From Dimorphilus gyrociliatus (taxonomy: Eukaryota > Animalia > Annelida): a DNA stretch of 64,000 bases. Numbering within the stretch: position 1 is the stretch's first letter; every line of letters starts with the position of its first letter. The notes under the pieces are model-generated. The model did not search any database and was not told where the DNA came from. It saw only the letters and a list, made by a program, of their open reading frames with translations. The position numbers and the translations under genes are program-made. The stretch is from NCBI GenBank assembly GCA_904063045.1, contig CAJFCJ010000011.1, positions 806,001-870,000 of the forward strand. The letters run 5' to 3'. Positions 16,390-24,031 of the stretch are shown in pieces.

Positions 16390-17040
16390 CTTGTCCGAAG
16401 AAAATGAATAAGGTGAAGATTTGTCCGTTCAATGAAATAACTACACGTGTCAAGCATCTAAGGGAAGGAACATATGGGAAACGGAATGAAAGAACTTAAC
16501 GAATGCACTTTCAGACATGCGCACTAGCAATCAAAATCAAATCAAATTTGAAACAAAATGTATTGATACTTTTTAGTTACAAATTTAAATATGAAATTTC
16601 TCTCAAAAATAAGTTTTCATGGACTTTGGGAAAATGTATAAAATTTTTCCAATAATTCTAAATATATAATGCTTACCTAGTTAGCTCATGTTAAAAAAGT
16701 TAATTTAAAAAATTATGCTTGTTGAAAATTACTCTAATTTTCTTAACAAAAAGAGCCAAGTTAATATGTTGTAATTGTCTCTATAGTTTATTGAACAGCA
16801 GCATTATATGCTTAAGCAAATATTTTTTAAAAAGGAGCTATAGAATATAATTCATTTACTATTTCTTTGAAGTTCTTGAAGGGGAAAGTAGGCTAAATTC
16901 CGACGCTCATCACGATATTGAACTATACATTGTAAGCATGACATAGCAAAAAGTTGTCATTGAATTCGCCACTGAGATACAATAGCAGGTGTCGCCACTT
17001 TTGGTGTTAAATTTAGTTCATTAGCTCCTGTTCAGGAAAC

Positions 17041-20000
17041 ATGAGCTACAAAATTCGTGTTTGCCTACTTGTGTTTACGATTTTATATGGAAGATTAACT
17101 TTAGCTCACGTCCGCTTAACTTTTCCGCCGGCTCGGAAATACGATTGGGACTTTTTAGACAATGTTAGGACTAGCCATCCTTGTGGAGTTCCCCAAGGTA
17201 TACGCCTTAACAGTTATAGTCAATTTTAACAATATGTAACGTGTTTTATATTCAAAATAATAATTCTAAATTTAGCAAAAGACTCTTTGAGTCTTTTTAT
17301 TATTAAAAATATTTATTTTTTTTTTATTAAAACTTTTTTTGTTTTGTCTGAAAAAGGGGGCGAAATGTTATAGGGCGTATTTCATTGAGTGCCTAATATA
17401 AATATATAAAAATTTCAATATAGGTTTTGGCCCGTTCACCGAATTGGTAGAAGAATCTAGATTGAATGTAACATGGCATCTAGCATACGCTCACAGGGTG
17501 AGTCTTTAAAATAATGTGTATATAGTATTTTACTAAATTTTGTCTTAGTGAAGTTTCATTTATACTATTTTCTCCTGTTTTAAAATACATAGGGAGGTTA
17601 TCGATTACAAATCCTAGAGGGTTCATCTACAAGGTATACTCTAACCAATCCAGACAAGTTTGAAGGTCTAACTGATGGAACGTAAGCAGGAGCAAAAAAA
17701 TTAATAATTAAAATTTAATTCAATCTTAAATATTTTTCAGTCGCCAATTTCATACCATTCAGCTTCCTAAAGGCTATACTTGTGAAAGATGTACTATTCG
17801 TTTACTTCGACAGGCCACCGAATGGTCTGGTGGATACTTGTTTTGGAGTTGTGCCGATGTCAAAATATTGCCCAAATTATCAACAGCACCAAAATGCCCT
17901 AAGCGTTTATTGAATACAAACAACATAGAAAATTCATGCGCAGCAAAATGCGCATCTGGAGTATGCCAAGAAAACAATCCACCCGAAATTTGCCTTGTTG
18001 GCAAGGTCTCAGACTGCGGTGGGGAAACTAGAGGTAAATGTGAAAGAGTAGCCTCTTTCACCAAACCATGGAATCGCTGTTTCTGTACTCCTGGATATAT
18101 GGGAGAGAAATGTGAAAAAGGTATACTATTATTATTTTATTATTTTACAATTTTTAAATGATATCTCATTCTAGAATCCAGCATTAAAGATAAACAAGAT
18201 ATTATGCTTGGAAAAATGAATAAACAAGTCGTCGTCAAAGATAAATTTAATGTATATTATCGTTTAATACAGGTAGTCATGCTAATTTCTCGCAATAAGC
18301 TATAACATTCTTAGAATTCATTTTTAGGATATAAACGAACTGGAAGTTGTTCTAAAAGTAAAGAGTACATCATGGGTGGCAATCGGGTGGAGGCCTTCAA
18401 GTATATATTACATATTTTTAATACATATTTTTAATACTGATCTTGTCATCCTAACAATTCTTTGTAGAAACAAGAAATACATGCAGAGCTTTTCCTAAAC
18501 TTGCAACCAGTCAAGGAAAGCCAGAAGGAACTGCTGAACCAGAGGGTGAAGGGAAACCTGAAGGAACTGCTGAACCAGAGGGTGAAGGGAAACCTGAAGG
18601 AACTGCTAAACCAGAGGGTGAAGGAAAACCAGAAGGTGAAGGGAAACCTGAAGGAACTGCTAAACCAGAGGGTGAAGGGAAACCTGAAGGAACTGCTGAA
18701 CCAGAGGGTGAAGGAAAACCTGAAGGTGAAGGGAAACCTGAAGGAACTGCTAAACCAGAAGGTGAAGGGAAACCTGAAGGAACTGCTAAACCAGAGGGTG
18801 AAGGAAAACCAGAAGGTGAAGGGAAACCTGAAGGAACTGCTAAACCAGAGGGTGAAGGGAAACCTGAAGGAACTGCTGAACCAGAGGGTGAAGGAAAACC
18901 TGAAGGTGAAGGGAAACCTGAAGGAACTGCTAAACCAGAGGGTGAAGGAAAACCAGAAGGTGAAGGGAAACCTGAAGGAACTGCTAAACCAGAGGGTGAA
19001 GGGAAACCTGAAGGAACTGCTAAACCAGAGGGTGAAGGGAAACCTGAAGGAACTGCTGAACCAGAGGGTGAAGGGAAACCTGAAGGAACTGCTGAACCAG
19101 AGGGTGAAGGAAAACCTGAAGGTGAAGGGAAACCTGAAGGAACTGCTGAACCAGAGGGTGAAGGGAAACCTGAAGGAACTGCTAAACCAGAGGGTGAAGG
19201 GAAACCTGAAGGAACTGCTGAACCAGAGGGTGAAGGAAAACCTGAAGGTGAAGGGAAACCTGAAGGAACTGCTGAACCAGAGGGTGAAGGAAAACCAGAA
19301 GGTGAAGGGAAACCTGAAGGAACTGCTAAACCAGAGGGTGAAGGGAAACCTGAAGGAACTGCTAAACCAGAGGGTGAAGGAAAACCAGAAGGTGAAGGGA
19401 AACCTGAAGGAACTGCTAAACCAGAGGGTGAAGGGAAACCTGAAGGAACTGCTGAACCAGAGGGTGAAGGAAAACCTGAAGGTGAAGGGAAACCTGAAGG
19501 AACTGCTAAACCAGAGGGTGAAGGAAAACCAGAAGGTGAAGGGAAACCTGAAGGAACTGCTAAACCAGAGGGTGAAGGGAAACCTGAAGGAACTGCTGAA
19601 CCAGAGGGTGAAGGAAAACCAGAAGGTGAAGGGAAACCTGAAGGAACTGCTGAACCAGAAGGTGAAGGAAAACCTGAAGGCGAGGGAAAACCAGAAGGAA
19701 CTGCTGAACCTGAAGGAGAGCCAGAAGGTGGGGGAGAGTTTCACCCGATGGACTGCACTGATATTGTCATCGGTTCTGCTCGAGGTATATACTCAAACAT
19801 TGGTGACTACTATACGAGAGATAGATCTACCCCTCAAAGAGATAGGTTTTATGGTGGGGAAGATTCTCTAACTGCAGCTTTTGGCTACGAAGAAAATGGA
19901 GAAACCCTAATTGCCTTTAGAAGGAAACTTGACACCAAAGATCCTGCTGACCATGCAATTACCGAAGGCTTCATGCATGCTATATTTGCGAGAGGACAAG

Positions 20001-21772
20001 AGCATGGAAAATATATACATCGTCCGGCTTCGAGCTTAGAAGCAAATAGAGCTCAGGATAAAATGTTTTATCGTAAAGATGAAGTCAAATATCACGGACA
20101 CGGTGATCAGAGAGTAATTAGAAACATTAATTTCTTGGAAAAAAAAGATCTAAAAGAGGACGGATTTTGTTTTGGGGAGAGAAGGTTTCCAGTCAATTGT
20201 GATGAAAATTGTGACTACCATGCTAGCTGGATATACAATGAGAGCACTGATATAATCAGTTTCACAATTATAACAAGACAAGCTCCTAACACTTGGACTG
20301 CTGTTGGTTTTGCTGTAGGCGAAGTTATGGAAAACGTTGATGTTGTCATCGGAAATGCAGAAAGTGGTACAGTTTGGGATGCTTATATTGATGGTAGATA
20401 TAGCGCTCCAGTTCGGGATGAAATACAAAACATTAGGAATACTTCTATATCTCGAATAGACGGTGTAACGACCATGCGTTTTGAAAGGCCTAGGATCTCT
20501 TCAAATGAAAAATTTACTTTTTCTGATACTCAATGTCTTAATTTTTTCTTTCCCGTCTCTCCAGGTTCTTTTGATACTAAAAGTCAGATAATGCAGAGAC
20601 ATATTGCAACACCAATTATACAAAACAATATTTGTGTGGGAAAATGTACACCTGGAACAACTGCTAAACCAGAAGATGAAGGAACTGCTGAACCTGAAGG
20701 AACTGCTGAACCTGAAGGAACTGATAAACCTGAAGGAACTACTAAACCAGATGGTGAAAGAGGACCAAATATCACAGCAACAATTAGAATAACATCACTG
20801 CCATGGTCACCAGATCTGAAGAATAAGGAAAGCCCTATCAGAAAGAAGACAGATAAACTTTTGAGCAAAGAACTTATGGCAGTTTTGAAAGAATCAGTGA
20901 AAAAAATAATAATAACAGACTATAATATTGGAAGTGTAATTGCTTCCACTGTTCTAGTTCTTAATAAAAAAGATTCTAATAACAAACAAACGGTAATTAA
21001 CAAGCTTAAACATCAAATTGACAGAGGAATTTTGGGAAACTTCACAGTCGATAAAGATTATCCACTCATTGACAATCAAAGTGAAAAAACTTCAGGTGAG
21101 ATTTTTAGGTTAGCAGAATTAAATAAAAATTTTCATTTATAGTTAACGACGACGGCTTATCGGAGGAAGATAAAATTATTATTTCTGTTGTCGTATCTGC
21201 TCTTCTTATGCTGTTGATATTTATTATACCGTTGACTATCTGTAAAATAAAGAATAAGAAAATCCCTATCGACAGTCAGGATAAGAAAAAAGTAAAACAT
21301 TATATAAATAAGTTAAAATTCTAAATTTTAAACGTTTTAGATATTTGATGATTTTGCTGATAATCGTGTACAACCAAATGAGTCAAGTGATATTCAAACA
21401 AAAATTGATAAACATGAAAATTTAGGTACAGGTGAAAATGGATATTCAACCTTCGTTTCTTCTTCAGATGAAAAACCTAACAAAGTCCAGTCATCAACTA
21501 TCCAATTATCAAGCCGGAATAATATCGACGAAGCTGGGAAGGACAAAGTCACTGATCCAATTTTGAAACCGTTTCAACCTGTATCGTATCAGCCTCCTTT
21601 TTATAATGGAAGCAACTCTCAAAGTTTAACGAAAACAATAAATACAACCCCACACAACTTTAATGACAGTAACACCTTGCCTAAAAAATCCTCTGATGAC
21701 GGCACAATCTACGAAAGCACTGTTTCACATTCTGATCAACCAAAAATATCTAAAATTCGAGTTGGAAAATAA
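17041..21772 (+). CDS. Type-I membrane protein of about 1359 aa: signal peptide, His-brace LPMO-like domain, Cys-rich/EGF, DOMON (split by PEG repeat), DOMON, SEA, TM, cytoplasmic tail
   Basis: Nine exons: 17041-17197, 17424-17497, 17593-17681, 17741-18120, 18175-18272, 18328-18400, 18468-21095, 21143-21291, 21341-21772; all GT-AG with consistent phases, 4080 nt in total. Motifs: TLA|HVRLTFPPAR, WHLAYAHRGG, FWSCADV, CFCTPGYMGEKC, WVAIGW...HPMDCTDIVIG...KYHG, WTAVGF...MENVDVVIG...RH, GSVIA, TM IIISVVVSALLMLLIFIIPLTIC. Confidence 0.88.
18521..19729 (+). repeat. Coding minisatellite of 36-bp and 54-bp units encoding PEGTA(E/K)PEGEGK with optional extra PEGEGK (27 GGAACTGCT cores, 403 codons)
   Basis: Near-identical units CCTGAAGGAACTGCT(G/A)AACCAGAGGGTGAAGG(G/A)AAA. 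The true frame is fixed by the acceptor at 18467 and runs in frame into HPMDCTD. Confidence 0.97.
20651..20758 (+). repeat. Short degenerate copy of the PEGTA repeat in the DOMON2-SEA linker
   Basis: PGTTAKPEDEGTAEPEGTAEPEGTDKPEGTTKPDGE, built from the same GAAGGAACTGCT core. Confidence 0.85.
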
Positions 21773-22706: not shown

Positions 22707-24031
22707 ATGTCTGGAACTCTTGCATGCCTAGAACATTTAACTTTTCCTCACTCGATGCAAACCGCACTACAGCATATGGAAGAGTGGCTTTCTAACGGTC
22801 GTGTCCCAGGTATCAACATTTCATCTGAAGAATTTATGAAACAAATCTGTGATGATTACGTTTTTTCGACGAAGTCAAAGAAAAATCCGAAAGTAAACTA
22901 CAGGTGTATGTGAATTTCAGATAGAGCTGATTTTGAATTTTTTTATACAGAGCCAGTTAACAGGGTTACAGGAGCTGTTTCTAGTTACTAAACTAGCCAA
23001 AGCATTTTCAAAAAGAGGATCTCATGAGAGTATACGTCAAGAACTCTTTTGGACTCTTTTCCCTCCCAGTCACATGACCCCTCAGAGGCAACAGGTTTTA
23101 ACGAAAGTAATTGGAATTGGCATTGCAGAAAAAGTTGTTGAGGTTCTTGAATTCGGTGCTCGATTCATCAACGCTTCCGGCCCAACCTCGCCGTCATCAC
23201 AATATATAATACAGCATACAATCGATGATTACGTAAATTTGTTCCCTAATAATCCCTCGTTGCAGAATATACATTACGAATCAGAGTTATTTACTTGTTC
23301 CTTTCTATGTACCTGCTCTCAAATTCTTAAACCACCAAGAAAAATAGAAAAAAATTTTGACATTGAAAAGAAAGAATTAACTTTGGATATTCTTAAAATT
23401 ACATCTAATTGGTTGTACTCAAAGCCAACTATTGGAATAGCTAGCTTGCCAAAGCAAGAGGGAGCTTTACTGCCCCCTGATCCTAATTGCAAGTCTCCGA
23501 CCCCTGTTGTTGGATTAATTATGTGGATATGCAAAGCTGCTTTAATTTGCTATCCACAACAACTTTCGAATGAATGGAAAAAGTATTATTCAAGATTACG
23601 TAAGGGTATATGTGGCTGCCTTTGGGAATTTAAAAAATTAAAAGGATCAGAACAAGCTCCTCTGATTGCAAATACAGATGTCATTCATATGGCTAAAGAT
23701 CTTAGTAAAATGTGTAATGAGCTACAATTGCGGAACGAATGCATTGTAATTGAGACCGTGGATGTATTTTTGGATTTTCTAGATGTTGCAATAGGATCGT
23801 TAACAGTTCGAGCTTCGCCGAGTATAAATTCTAGTCTTTTGTATATAATACAAATTCTGTTAAATTATTTTATTTACAGATGAGATTCGAGAAGTGCTTC
23901 AAAGTTTGCCCTCGACAATATCAGTAAAAAAGTCAAGTATCAAACTATTACCGAAAGATATGTACTTTAAATCGGCTGGCCTTGGTGATGATAGCGAAGA
24001 AGAATTGGAAGAGCAAATGGATTATTATTGA
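22707..24031 (+). CDS. INTS15: Integrator subunit 15 (C7orf26)-like (3 exons)
   Basis: LTGLQELFLV...SIRQELFWTLFPP...RQQVLTKVIGIGIA...VLEFGARFI parallels C7orf26 LNSLQELQLL...VRQIIFSSLFSP...RMSLLGKLVSMAVA...VLECAASWL. Confidence 0.7.

What the first reader, a model, noticed from the sequence alone, without database searches (positions are those of the whole stretch)
17041..17870. Copper histidine-brace (LPMO-like) domain at the mature N-terminus of an animal membrane protein
The signal peptide ends T-L-A, so the mature protein should begin with His (CAC 17107-17109): HVRLTFPPAR. A second His follows in VTWHLAYAH (CAC 17492-17494), and the domain closes with C-x2-C...LLRQATEW...YLFWSCADVKI. N-terminal His, H-x3-P-x2-R, a mid-domain His and a Q...F/Y-x2-CAD-V-x-I last strand are established signatures of LPMO and LPMO-like folds; Phe sits at the axial position as in many AA10/AA15 enzymes. 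The domain is compact (about 130 aa) and to my eye more like small bacterial/fungal LPMO-like proteins than typical AA15. The motif is split over four exons, so the ORF track misses it.
Basis: partly seen in the sequence, partly recalled or inferred. Interest (0 to 1): 0.85.

Follow-up and report, generated by a model that had tools for sequence, protein, structure and literature searches.

The report
Copper-brace domain heading a membrane protein
The first ~130 residues of a marine invertebrate's cell-surface protein (the counterpart of the fly gene nahoda) have the fold and the conserved two-histidine copper site of the polysaccharide-cutting LPMO enzymes; databases show this link only patchily and nobody has tested it.

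Summary
A 100%-identical spliced contig in a public run confirms this.

They encode a signal peptide ending T-L-A, then His23, then a 129-residue domain. The gene is a 9-exon, 1359-aa orthologue of "DOMON-like domain-containing protein nahoda": signal peptide, LPMO-like domain, EGF-like region, two DOMON domains, SEA, one transmembrane helix.

- In 208 of 208 relatives whose match reaches the domain's first position, that residue is His, sitting directly behind a signal-peptidase-type site.
- His76 is kept in 160/163 full-length domains and Phe141 in 155/163.
- A family profile hits the Thermobia AA15 LPMO (E 9e-6), pairing His76 with brace His91 and Phe141 with axial Tyr184.
- An AlphaFold model of a 52%-identical orthologue (pLDDT 91.7) has LPMOs or LPMO-like proteins as its 22 best structural matches.

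So the LPMO-like reading is supported. The domain fits neither AA15 nor fungal X325/Bim1 fully; the nearest curated sequence family is bacterial SCE4755. Copper binding and activity remain untested.

One 2019 survey mentions the clade in passing. The scan also noted a different LPMO-like gene elsewhere in this genome (s1-080497).

The parts
17041..17197 (+). Exon 1. Signal peptide (17041-17106, residues 1-22, ending T-L-A). His23, the mature residue 1, at 17107-17109. Start of the LPMO-like domain, including invariant Asp37 and Cys48 (17182-17184).
   Evidence: Translation; splice join 17197|17424 seen in runs X3 and X2; exon alone hits family profile positions 1-31 at E 2e-15.
17424..17497 (+). 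Exon 2. Strand and loop carrying His71 (17477-17479), Tyr74 (17486-17488) and the second brace histidine His76 (17492-17494).
   Evidence: His76 aligns with His91 of TdAA15A (role of His91 from PMC5823890). Conservation.
17593..17681 (+). Exon 3. The variable middle strands of the beta-sandwich (residues 78-107).
   Evidence: Contiguous alignment to orthologues across residues 1-159.
17741..17873 (+). First part of exon 4, the last strands of the domain. C-x2-C (17781-17792), R130/E134/W135, axial-position Phe141 (17841-17843), Cys144, Asp146. The domain ends near residue 151.
   Evidence: Phe141 aligns with Tyr184 of TdAA15A, and the CAD motif is shared. Exon alone hits profile positions 89-132 at E 1e-16.
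17895..18120 (+). Rest of exon 4. Cys-rich EGF-like region (residues 159-233).
   Evidence: Cysteine pattern. Orthologues hit EGF_2, EGF_Teneurin and EGF_TEN at the same place. The window's own piece gave no Pfam hit at E<=0.1.
18175..18400 (+). Exons 5 (18175-18272) and 6 (18328-18400). N-terminal half of DOMON domain 1.
   Evidence: Joins in run X3. Orthologues show DOMON profile positions 2-40 here.
18468..21095 (+). Exon 7. A ~400-residue KPEGEG/KPEGTA repeat (DNA about 18500-19720) inserted in a loop of DOMON 1, then the rest of DOMON 1, DOMON 2, a short PEG linker and a SEA domain.
   Evidence: Open frame; tandem repeat; Pfam DOMON E 6.8e-31 with 2 stretches and SEA E 4.2e-7.
21143..21291 (+). 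Exon 8. The single transmembrane helix (about residues 1175-1200).
   Evidence: Hydropathy peak and a closed reading frame for the 9-exon model. tblastn alignment to the transmembrane segment of the Drosophila willistoni orthologue.
21341..21772 (+). Exon 9. Cytoplasmic tail and stop codon.
   Evidence: The only exon combination that gives one open frame of 1359 aa. This junction was not checked with reads.

Best explanation
Residues 23-151 of this type I membrane protein (an orthologue of insect nahoda) form a compact beta-sandwich of the LPMO superfamily.

SHOWN:
- The exons are spliced as read.
- The domain belongs to a large, mostly animal family.
- Signal-peptide cleavage by the (-3,-1) rule would make His23 the free N-terminus.
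- His23, His76 and Phe141 are near-invariant. His76 and Phe141 align with the copper-site residues His91 and Tyr184 of a solved, active AA15 LPMO, and both proteins open with His1.
- The predicted fold matches LPMOs first.

INFERRED:
- The amino group and side chain of His23, with the side chain of His76, clamp one copper ion (a histidine brace), with Phe141 beneath it.
- The domain is held away from the cell surface on a long Pro/Glu/Gly-rich stalk.
- It works as a redox-active copper head (Cu(II)/Cu(I) cycling with O2 or H2O2) acting on an extracellular glycan or matrix component.
- The two DOMON domains of the same chain, or extracellular ascorbate, supply electrons or hold the substrate. 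This would parallel the DOMON-fold cytochrome domain of cellobiose dehydrogenase feeding fungal LPMOs, and the DOMON domain fused to the copper monooxygenase DBH.

My odds: LPMO-superfamily fold and homology 0.95; a real copper site 0.75-0.8; a redox or oxidative role rather than mere copper hand-off about 0.5.
For: - Splicing.
- Gene model and transmembrane helix.
- Orthology to nahoda with 42-55% identity over residues 1-159.
- His first in 208/208 relatives; -1 residue G/A/S/C/T in 206/208; 187/208 with a classical presequence.
- H23 162/162, H76 160/163, F141 155/163, four cysteines near-invariant.
- Pfam LPMO_10 in 49/53 and BIM1-like in 48/53 domains.
- NCBIfam SCE4755 polysaccharide-monooxygenase-like family at E 1e-9 to 1e-13.
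- Family profile against the PDB: the only significant hit is TdAA15A (E 9e-6). It pairs H76 with His91, F141 with Tyr184, and shares C-x2-C and CAD: with residue roles from PMC5823890.
- AlphaFold model pLDDT 91.7, pTM 0.88.
- The best Foldseek hits are LPMOs.
- VIA-align ranks 1-22 are all LPMO or LPMO-like, with alignments starting at residue 1 of both proteins.
- ESM Atlas shape search gives LPMO_10 and BIM1-like clusters.
- DOMON x2 in the same ectodomain.
Against: - No coordinates are returned, so the His23-His76 distance and the presence or absence of a carboxylate at the fourth copper position could not be measured.
- The model is of orthologue P0051 (52% identical), not of the window's own spliced protein.
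- No signal-peptide predictor was available. Cleavage is inferred from the (-3,-1) rule and family conservation.
- The domain lacks the long L2 region that forms much of the substrate surface in AA10/AA15.
- An invariant Tyr74 sits where AA10/AA15 have a small Ala (Ala89 in TdAA15A). It could cover the copper.
- Single-sequence Pfam scores sit near the gathering thresholds.
- There is no cytochrome b561 or other obvious electron source for the DOMON domains in this protein.
- Whether these DOMONs bind haem was not tested.
- Run X3 has no recorded library type, although its contig is intron-free.
Confidence: 0.55

Rival explanations
1. Bim1/X325-like copper handling. The histidine brace binds Cu(II) at the cell surface and passes it on, for example to a Ctr-type importer, without catalysis. 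The membrane tether and long disordered stalk would play the role of Bim1's GPI anchor and Ser/Thr linker.
For: - Pfam BIM1-like_dom matches almost the whole model (positions 1-136 of 140) in 48/53 orthologues.
- LaX325 is a strong structural match (Z 11.1, 119 residues aligned).
- The domain is small and lacks L2, like X325.
- It is membrane-tethered.
- Invariant acidic residues (Asp37 in 163/163, Asp40, Glu134) are candidates for a fourth ligand.
- X325/Bim1 properties are taken from PMC7529816 and PMC7924993.
Against: - The family profile finds no X325 chain in the PDB even at E<=10, but does find AA15.
- Most BIM1-like scores are below Pfam's cut-off of 27 bits.
- The defining Asp ligand on a Gly-rich loop could not be located.
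- Fusion to two DOMON domains, a fold typical of redox proteins, fits a plain chaperone poorly.
- The anchor is a transmembrane helix, not GPI.
Confidence: 0.28
2. Metal-free binding module. The LPMO fold is kept only as a carbohydrate- or protein-binding domain (the old 'chitin-binding type-4' sense), and the histidines are conserved for structural or binding reasons.
For: - UniProt auto-names several members 'Chitin-binding type-4 domain-containing protein'.
- Many surface residues besides the brace are invariant. That fits a conserved binding partner.
Against: Absolute conservation of a histidine exactly at the signal-peptidase site (208/208), together with the second brace His and the axial aromatic residue, is the signature of a metal site that needs the free amino terminus. 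A mere binding module has no reason to keep it.
Confidence: 0.08
3. Chance motif or wrong gene model. The exons are not joined as read, or the similarity is coincidental.
For: None found. Exon 3 alone does not hit the family profile, but it covers the variable part of the domain.
Against: Spliced contig with no mismatch. E 4.9e-52 against the family profile. 1421 cluster representatives at E<=0.001.
Confidence: 0.01

Closest known systems
AA15 LPMOs (Thermobia domestica TdAA15A, PDB 5MSZ; Drosophila CG4362, CG42749, CG4367)
   Same: It is the only significant PDB sequence hit of the family profile (E 9e-6) and the best structural match (Z 13.3, 133 residues aligned, 25% identity). N-terminal His, His76 matching His91, an aromatic residue at the Tyr184 position, and shared C-x2-C and C-A-D motifs. 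Animal origin.
   Different: About 130 residues instead of about 190-200, with the L2 surface region largely missing. Phe instead of Tyr at the axial position. Invariant Tyr74 where AA15/AA10 have Ala89. Set at the tip of a large EGF-DOMON-SEA membrane protein rather than being a secreted enzyme. Activity is unknown.
X325 / Bim1 LPMO-like copper proteins of fungi (LaX325, PDB 6IBH/6IBJ; Pfam PF20238)
   Same: Small LPMO-like sandwich with an N-terminal His, tethered to the cell surface through a long disordered linker. Pfam BIM1-like matches nearly its whole model length. Structural Z 11.1.
   Different: No detectable profile-to-sequence match to LaX325. The Asp fourth ligand is not established. 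Transmembrane helix instead of GPI anchor. Mostly animal instead of fungal. Fused to DOMON domains.
SCE4755 family polysaccharide monooxygenase-like proteins of bacteria (NCBIfam NF043005)
   Same: The best-scoring curated sequence family (E 1e-9 to 1e-13 over model positions about 22-145 of 146). Atlas clusters of this family carry both LPMO_10 and BIM1-like signatures, as this domain does.
   Different: Scores of 24-50 bits are well under the family cut-off of 75, so the domain is a relative and not a member. The family is bacterial, stand-alone and itself uncharacterised. No paper in the library mentions it.
DOMON-fold redox partners of copper oxygenases: the cytochrome domain of cellobiose dehydrogenase with fungal LPMOs, and DOMON plus copper monooxygenase in DBH/MOXD1
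   Same: A DOMON-fold domain is combined with a mono-copper oxygen-activating domain. Here both lie on one chain. Several orthologues carry precomputed CDH-cyt (PF16010) hits. The role of CDH and DBH is established knowledge, not tested here.
   Different: Haem binding by these DOMONs was not tested. No flavin or b561 domain is present to recharge them. The copper domain is of the LPMO type, not the DBH type.
Drosophila nahoda and its orthologues ('DOMON-like domain-containing protein nahoda')
   Same: Same architecture and end-to-end similarity. The window's gene is the orthologue in this genome.
   Different: The length and sequence of the acidic Pro-rich repeat differ. nahoda has no described function in the papers held here; it appears only in gene lists.

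Membership tests
LPMO superfamily (histidine-brace beta-sandwich) | His is the first residue of the mature protein after signal-peptide cleavage | tested here: met
   The window has T-L-A|H. In 208/208 relatives His is first, the -1 residue is G/A/S/C/T in 206/208, and 187/208 have a classical presequence. No dedicated predictor or protein-level data.
LPMO superfamily (histidine-brace beta-sandwich) | A second conserved His that completes the brace | tested here: met
   His76 is kept in 160/163 domains and aligns with His91 of TdAA15A. Spatial adjacency was not measured.
LPMO superfamily (histidine-brace beta-sandwich) | Aromatic residue (Tyr/Phe) at the axial position on the last strand | tested here: met
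   Phe141 is kept in 155/163 domains and aligns with Tyr184 of TdAA15A.
LPMO superfamily (histidine-brace beta-sandwich) | Immunoglobulin-like beta-sandwich fold of LPMOs | tested here: met
   AlphaFold model of orthologue P0051, pLDDT 91.7. VIA-align ranks 1-22 are all LPMO or LPMO-like, Z 8.6-13.3. The best Foldseek hits are LPMOs.
LPMO superfamily (histidine-brace beta-sandwich) | Binds one copper ion; oxidatively cleaves a polysaccharide | not testable with these tools
   Needs protein chemistry (ICP-MS, EPR, product analysis).
CAZy AA15 / Pfam LPMO_10 | Sequence match above the family threshold over the whole domain | tested here: inconclusive
   LPMO_10 matches 49/53 orthologous domains at E<=0.01, and some score above the cut-off of 23 bits (P0051 29.0, P0119 28.8). 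All matches cover only model positions about 83-183 of 183. dbCAN/CAZy models were not available. The window's own spliced protein could not be submitted.
CAZy AA15 / Pfam LPMO_10 | Full-size catalytic domain with the L2 surface region, and a small Ala two residues before the brace His | tested here: not met
   The domain is 129 aa, against 195-201 aa for TdAA15A. Tyr74 (143/163) aligns with Ala89.
X325 / BIM1-like (Pfam PF20238) | Sequence match above the family threshold | tested here: inconclusive
   48/53 domains match at E<=0.01 over nearly the whole model. Most score 20-27 bits against a cut-off of 27; P0018 reaches 27.7. No LaX325 hit in the PDB profile search.
X325 / BIM1-like (Pfam PF20238) | Asp on a Gly-rich loop as the fourth equatorial copper ligand | not testable with these tools
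   No model coordinates are returned. Candidates are only listed: Asp37, Asp40, Asp105, Glu134 and the G78-G79 pair.
X325 / BIM1-like (Pfam PF20238) | GPI-anchored fungal cell-surface protein | tested here: not met
   A single transmembrane helix plus a cytoplasmic tail of about 160 aa. The family is mostly animal.
SCE4755 family (NCBIfam NF043005) | Score above the curated cut-off (75 bits) | tested here: not met
   24-50 bits, E 3e-5 to 3.5e-13. A relative, not a member.
nahoda orthologues | Architecture: signal peptide, LPMO-like domain, EGF-like region, DOMON x2 with an acidic Pro-rich insert, (SEA), transmembrane helix. End-to-end similarity. | tested here: met
   Named nahoda proteins of several insects are among the best hits.

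The most novel reading that the evidence does not exclude
The nahoda family is an unrecognised family of animal-wide LPMOs, a would-be new CAZy AA family. It would be anchored in the plasma membrane and carry its own electron relay (two DOMON domains) on the same chain. That makes it a self-contained cell-surface copper oxidase that remodels an extracellular glycan or matrix polymer in animals from sponges to amphioxus.
Probability: 0.2. Interest if true: 0.85.

Novelty: new variant of a known kind. Interest (0 to 1): 0.6.

Why it matters
LPMOs and LPMO-like copper proteins are studied mainly in fungi and bacteria. In animals the only characterised family is AA15.

Here a second LPMO-type histidine-brace domain heads a membrane protein found in sponges, nematodes, annelids, molluscs, arthropods, echinoderms, hemichordates and amphioxus, with related domains in a green alga and a haptophyte. 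It is always joined to DOMON domains. Its fly orthologue (nahoda) has no assigned function.

Of the 120 orthologues listed, only four carry any precomputed LPMO-type Pfam label. Most annotations, Drosophila's included, therefore miss it.

The prediction is directly testable, because the domain is about 130 residues and fly genetics is available. If the domain binds copper and is redox-active, it would give a function to a conserved orphan gene. It would also provide a natural in-cis LPMO/DOMON pair for studying electron supply to the histidine brace.

Tried and rejected
- Pfam on the single exon translations of the window gave nothing relevant, because the pieces are too short. The spliced protein has no reference, so it could not go to Pfam, structure prediction or the PDB search. 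I used orthologues and my own hmmsearch instead.
- I looked for a spliced copy in JGI metagenome contigs with a 20-nt junction pattern, to obtain a referable cDNA. There were 0 matches.
- I searched bacterial and archaeal genomes with back-translated family motifs, to get genomic context for prokaryotic relatives. 58 pattern matches came back, and none was a relative.
- A length-limited search with the domain profile returned only eukaryotic members and exon fragments, with no bacterial members.
- A PDB sequence search with DOMON 2 of the window gave no informative hit, so haem-type versus sugar-type DOMON was left open.
- Literature searches for nahoda, X325/LPMO/DOMON, histidine brace+DOMON+EGF, LPMO-like/metazoa and SCE4755 found no functional study. 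The only relevant text is one sentence in Voshol et al. 2019 (PMC6950343).
- I rejected His71 as the brace partner. It is less conserved than His76 (135/163 against 160/163), and it aligns with His86 of TdAA15A, not the ligand His91.
Full report
**What is in the sequence**

An ATG at 17041 opens a 22-residue presequence: basic MSYKIR, a hydrophobic core, then R-L-T-L-A. CAC 17107-17109 (His23) follows and opens HVRLTFPPAR. Exon 2 carries VTWHLAYAH, with His71 at 17477-17479 and His76 at 17492-17494. Exon 4 carries C-E-R-C, LLRQATEW and YLFWSCADVKI. One detail is off: the spacing is H-x5-P-x2-R, not H-x3-P-x2-R.

**Splicing and gene model**

Public runs laid on 16900-18480 include a 970-nt contig of run X3 with no mismatch. 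It joins 17197|17424, 17497|17593, 17681|17741, 18120|18175, 18272|18328 and 18400|18468, all GT..AG. Two marine metatranscriptomes (a coral and a marine metagenome) show three of these joins at about 91-99% identity. The four-exon reading is therefore experimentally supported, although X3's library type is not on record.

Extending the model with the open frame, an orthologue's transmembrane segment and frame closure gives nine exons and 1359 residues:
- signal peptide, residues 1-22;
- the domain in question, residues 23-151;
- a Cys-rich EGF-like region, residues 159-233;
- DOMON 1, interrupted by a ~400-residue KPEGEG/KPEGTA repeat;
- DOMON 2 and a SEA domain (Pfam DOMON E 6.8e-31, SEA E 4.2e-7);
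- one transmembrane helix near residues 1175-1200;
- a cytoplasmic tail of about 160 residues.

"Animal membrane protein" is correct.

**The family**

A search with the DOMON part returned 137 proteins. The named ones are "DOMON-like domain-containing protein nahoda" or uncharacterised proteins of insects, crustaceans, chelicerates, myriapods, molluscs, echinoderms, a hemichordate, amphioxus and a nematomorph. The window's first 159 residues align without breaks to more than 90 of them at 42-55% identity.

A profile of 53 orthologous domains (A1) finds 1421 cluster representatives at E<=0.001 among 1.84 billion proteins, 377 of them at E<=1e-10. Named members include a sponge, nematodes, an annelid, a springtail and a mite. 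A green alga and a haptophyte are also represented. I saw no vertebrate among the named hits, but that was not tested systematically.

I did not test that.

**Is the N-terminal histidine real and conserved?**

- 208 family domains reach profile position 1, and all 208 start with His.
- The residue before it is G/A/S/C/T in 206, and the -3 residue is small or aliphatic in 205.
- 187 of them have a Met-initiated presequence of 14-40 residues with a hydrophobic core. The rest look like over-extended gene models that still show the same site.
- Among 163 near-full-length domains, His23 is kept in 162/162, His76 in 160/163 and His71 in only 135/163. Phe141 is kept in 155/163, Asp37 in 163/163 and Tyr74 in 143/163. 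The four cysteines are near-invariant.

**Relation to LPMO families**

Scanned alone, 49/53 orthologous domains match Pfam LPMO_10 (best E 6.3e-9; only the C-terminal half of the model). 48/53 match BIM1-like_dom (best E 3.8e-7; nearly the whole model). NCBIfam gives a single family, SCE4755 polysaccharide-monooxygenase-like, at E 1e-9 to 1e-13 but far under its cut-off.

The profile against all PDB sequences has one significant hit, the Thermobia AA15 LPMO 5MSZ (E 9e-6). In that alignment:
- the H-x4-H motif lines up with H86-x4-H91;
- Phe141 lines up with Tyr184;
- the C-x2-C and C-A-D motifs are shared.

The paper on that structure states that His1 and His91 hold the copper, Tyr184 is the axial residue, and Ala89 is AA10-like (PMC5823890). 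Here Tyr74 takes the place of Ala89.

An AlphaFold2 model of orthologue P0051 residues 24-156 (52% identical to the window) has pLDDT 91.7 and pTM 0.88, with eight strands.
- The best Foldseek hits are LPMOs (AA10, AA16, AA11, AA15, AA9).
- The Foldseek-independent search puts LPMOs or LPMO-like proteins at ranks 1-22. AA15 gives Z 13.3 with all 133 residues aligned. AA16 gives 12.1, AA10 11.8, AA11 11.5, AA13 11.3 and LaX325 11.1. The alignments start at residue 1 of both partners.
- The ESM Atlas shape and feature searches give LPMO_10, BIM1-like and SCE4755 clusters.

**What it is and how it probably works**

The shown part: this is an LPMO-superfamily domain with a complete, strongly conserved histidine-brace signature, at the outer tip of a stalked type I membrane protein.

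The inferred part: it binds one copper through the amino terminus and side chain of His23 and the side chain of His76, above Phe141.

Two functional readings remain.
- *A redox-active head.* I favour this at about 0.5. The only solved relative detectable by sequence is an active enzyme. The domain is also invariably fused to two DOMON domains, a fold that accompanies copper oxygenases (DBH) and, as the CDH cytochrome domain, reduces fungal LPMOs (established knowledge).
- *Bim1-like copper capture and hand-off*, at about 0.3. The small size, missing L2 region, whole-length BIM1-like match and membrane tether all fit it. Its defining Asp ligand (PMC7529816) could not be checked because no coordinates are returned.

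A metal-free binding module is unlikely, given the absolute conservation of His at the cleavage site.

**Known or new**

In the papers held here nahoda appears only in gene lists. Reviews treat X325/Bim1 as fungal and AA15 as the animal LPMO family.

One bioinformatic survey (Voshol et al. [quoted passage not shown] UniProt auto-labels a few fragments "Chitin-binding type-4". Only 4 of the 120 orthologues listed carry an LPMO-type Pfam label.

The link is therefore detectable and has been glimpsed, but it is neither characterised nor generally annotated. I rate it a new variant of a known kind: a distinct LPMO-like clade with a new architecture. The window's gene is one ordinary member of that clade.

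**Limits**

- The window's own spliced protein could not be submitted to the reference-only tools, so orthologues stand in for it.
- Cleavage, copper binding, geometry and activity are inferences.
- The exon 8/9 junctions were not checked with reads.
- Bacterial relatives and their gene neighbourhoods could not be retrieved.

Noticed in passing
window 18500-19720 (+), inside exon 7: A ~1.2-kb tandem repeat (periods 18/36/54/90 nt) encodes about 400 residues of KPEGEG/KPEGTA. It sits in a loop in the middle of DOMON domain 1, between WVAIGWRPS and MDCTDIVIG. The other two frames and the opposite strand are also open, which produces spurious long ORFs (18501-19871 +, 18446-19744 -). Orthologues have a PARP-like acidic Pro-rich insert at the same place, and isoforms that differ by about 200-300 residues, so the insert may be alternatively spliced.
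   Followed up: partly
window 20677-20748 (+): A second, short copy of the same PEG-type repeat (4 x 18 nt) forms the linker between DOMON 2 and the SEA domain.
   Followed up: no
window 17465-17473 (+), residues N67-V68-T69: An N-x-T glycosylation sequon lies just before the W-H-L-A-Y-x-H motif. It is present in 93 of 163 family domains. A glycan here would lie close to the presumed copper site.
   Followed up: partly
window 17486-17488 (+), Tyr74: A near-invariant Tyr (143/163) occupies the position of the small Ala (Ala89 in TdAA15A) that shapes the copper environment in AA10/AA15. This is the clearest active-site difference from known LPMOs.
   Followed up: partly
window 17312-17345 (intron 1): An A/T-rich low-complexity stretch attracts short unrelated contigs from all three runs. 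It is not evidence of expression of the intron.
   Followed up: no
window 16900-18480, runs X1 and X2: Spliced fragments about 91-99% identical occur in a coral metatranscriptome and a marine metatranscriptome. The source animal or a close relative therefore lives in such samples and expresses the gene.
   Followed up: partly
P0202 (Bryopsis sp., 1293 aa) and P0201 (Pleurochrysis carterae, 213 aa): Family members at E about 1e-22 occur in a green alga and a haptophyte, so the domain is not strictly animal. Contamination was not excluded.
   Followed up: no
window 22933-23883 (+): A 316-aa open frame lies downstream of the gene, presumably an exon of the neighbouring gene. Not examined.
   Followed up: no
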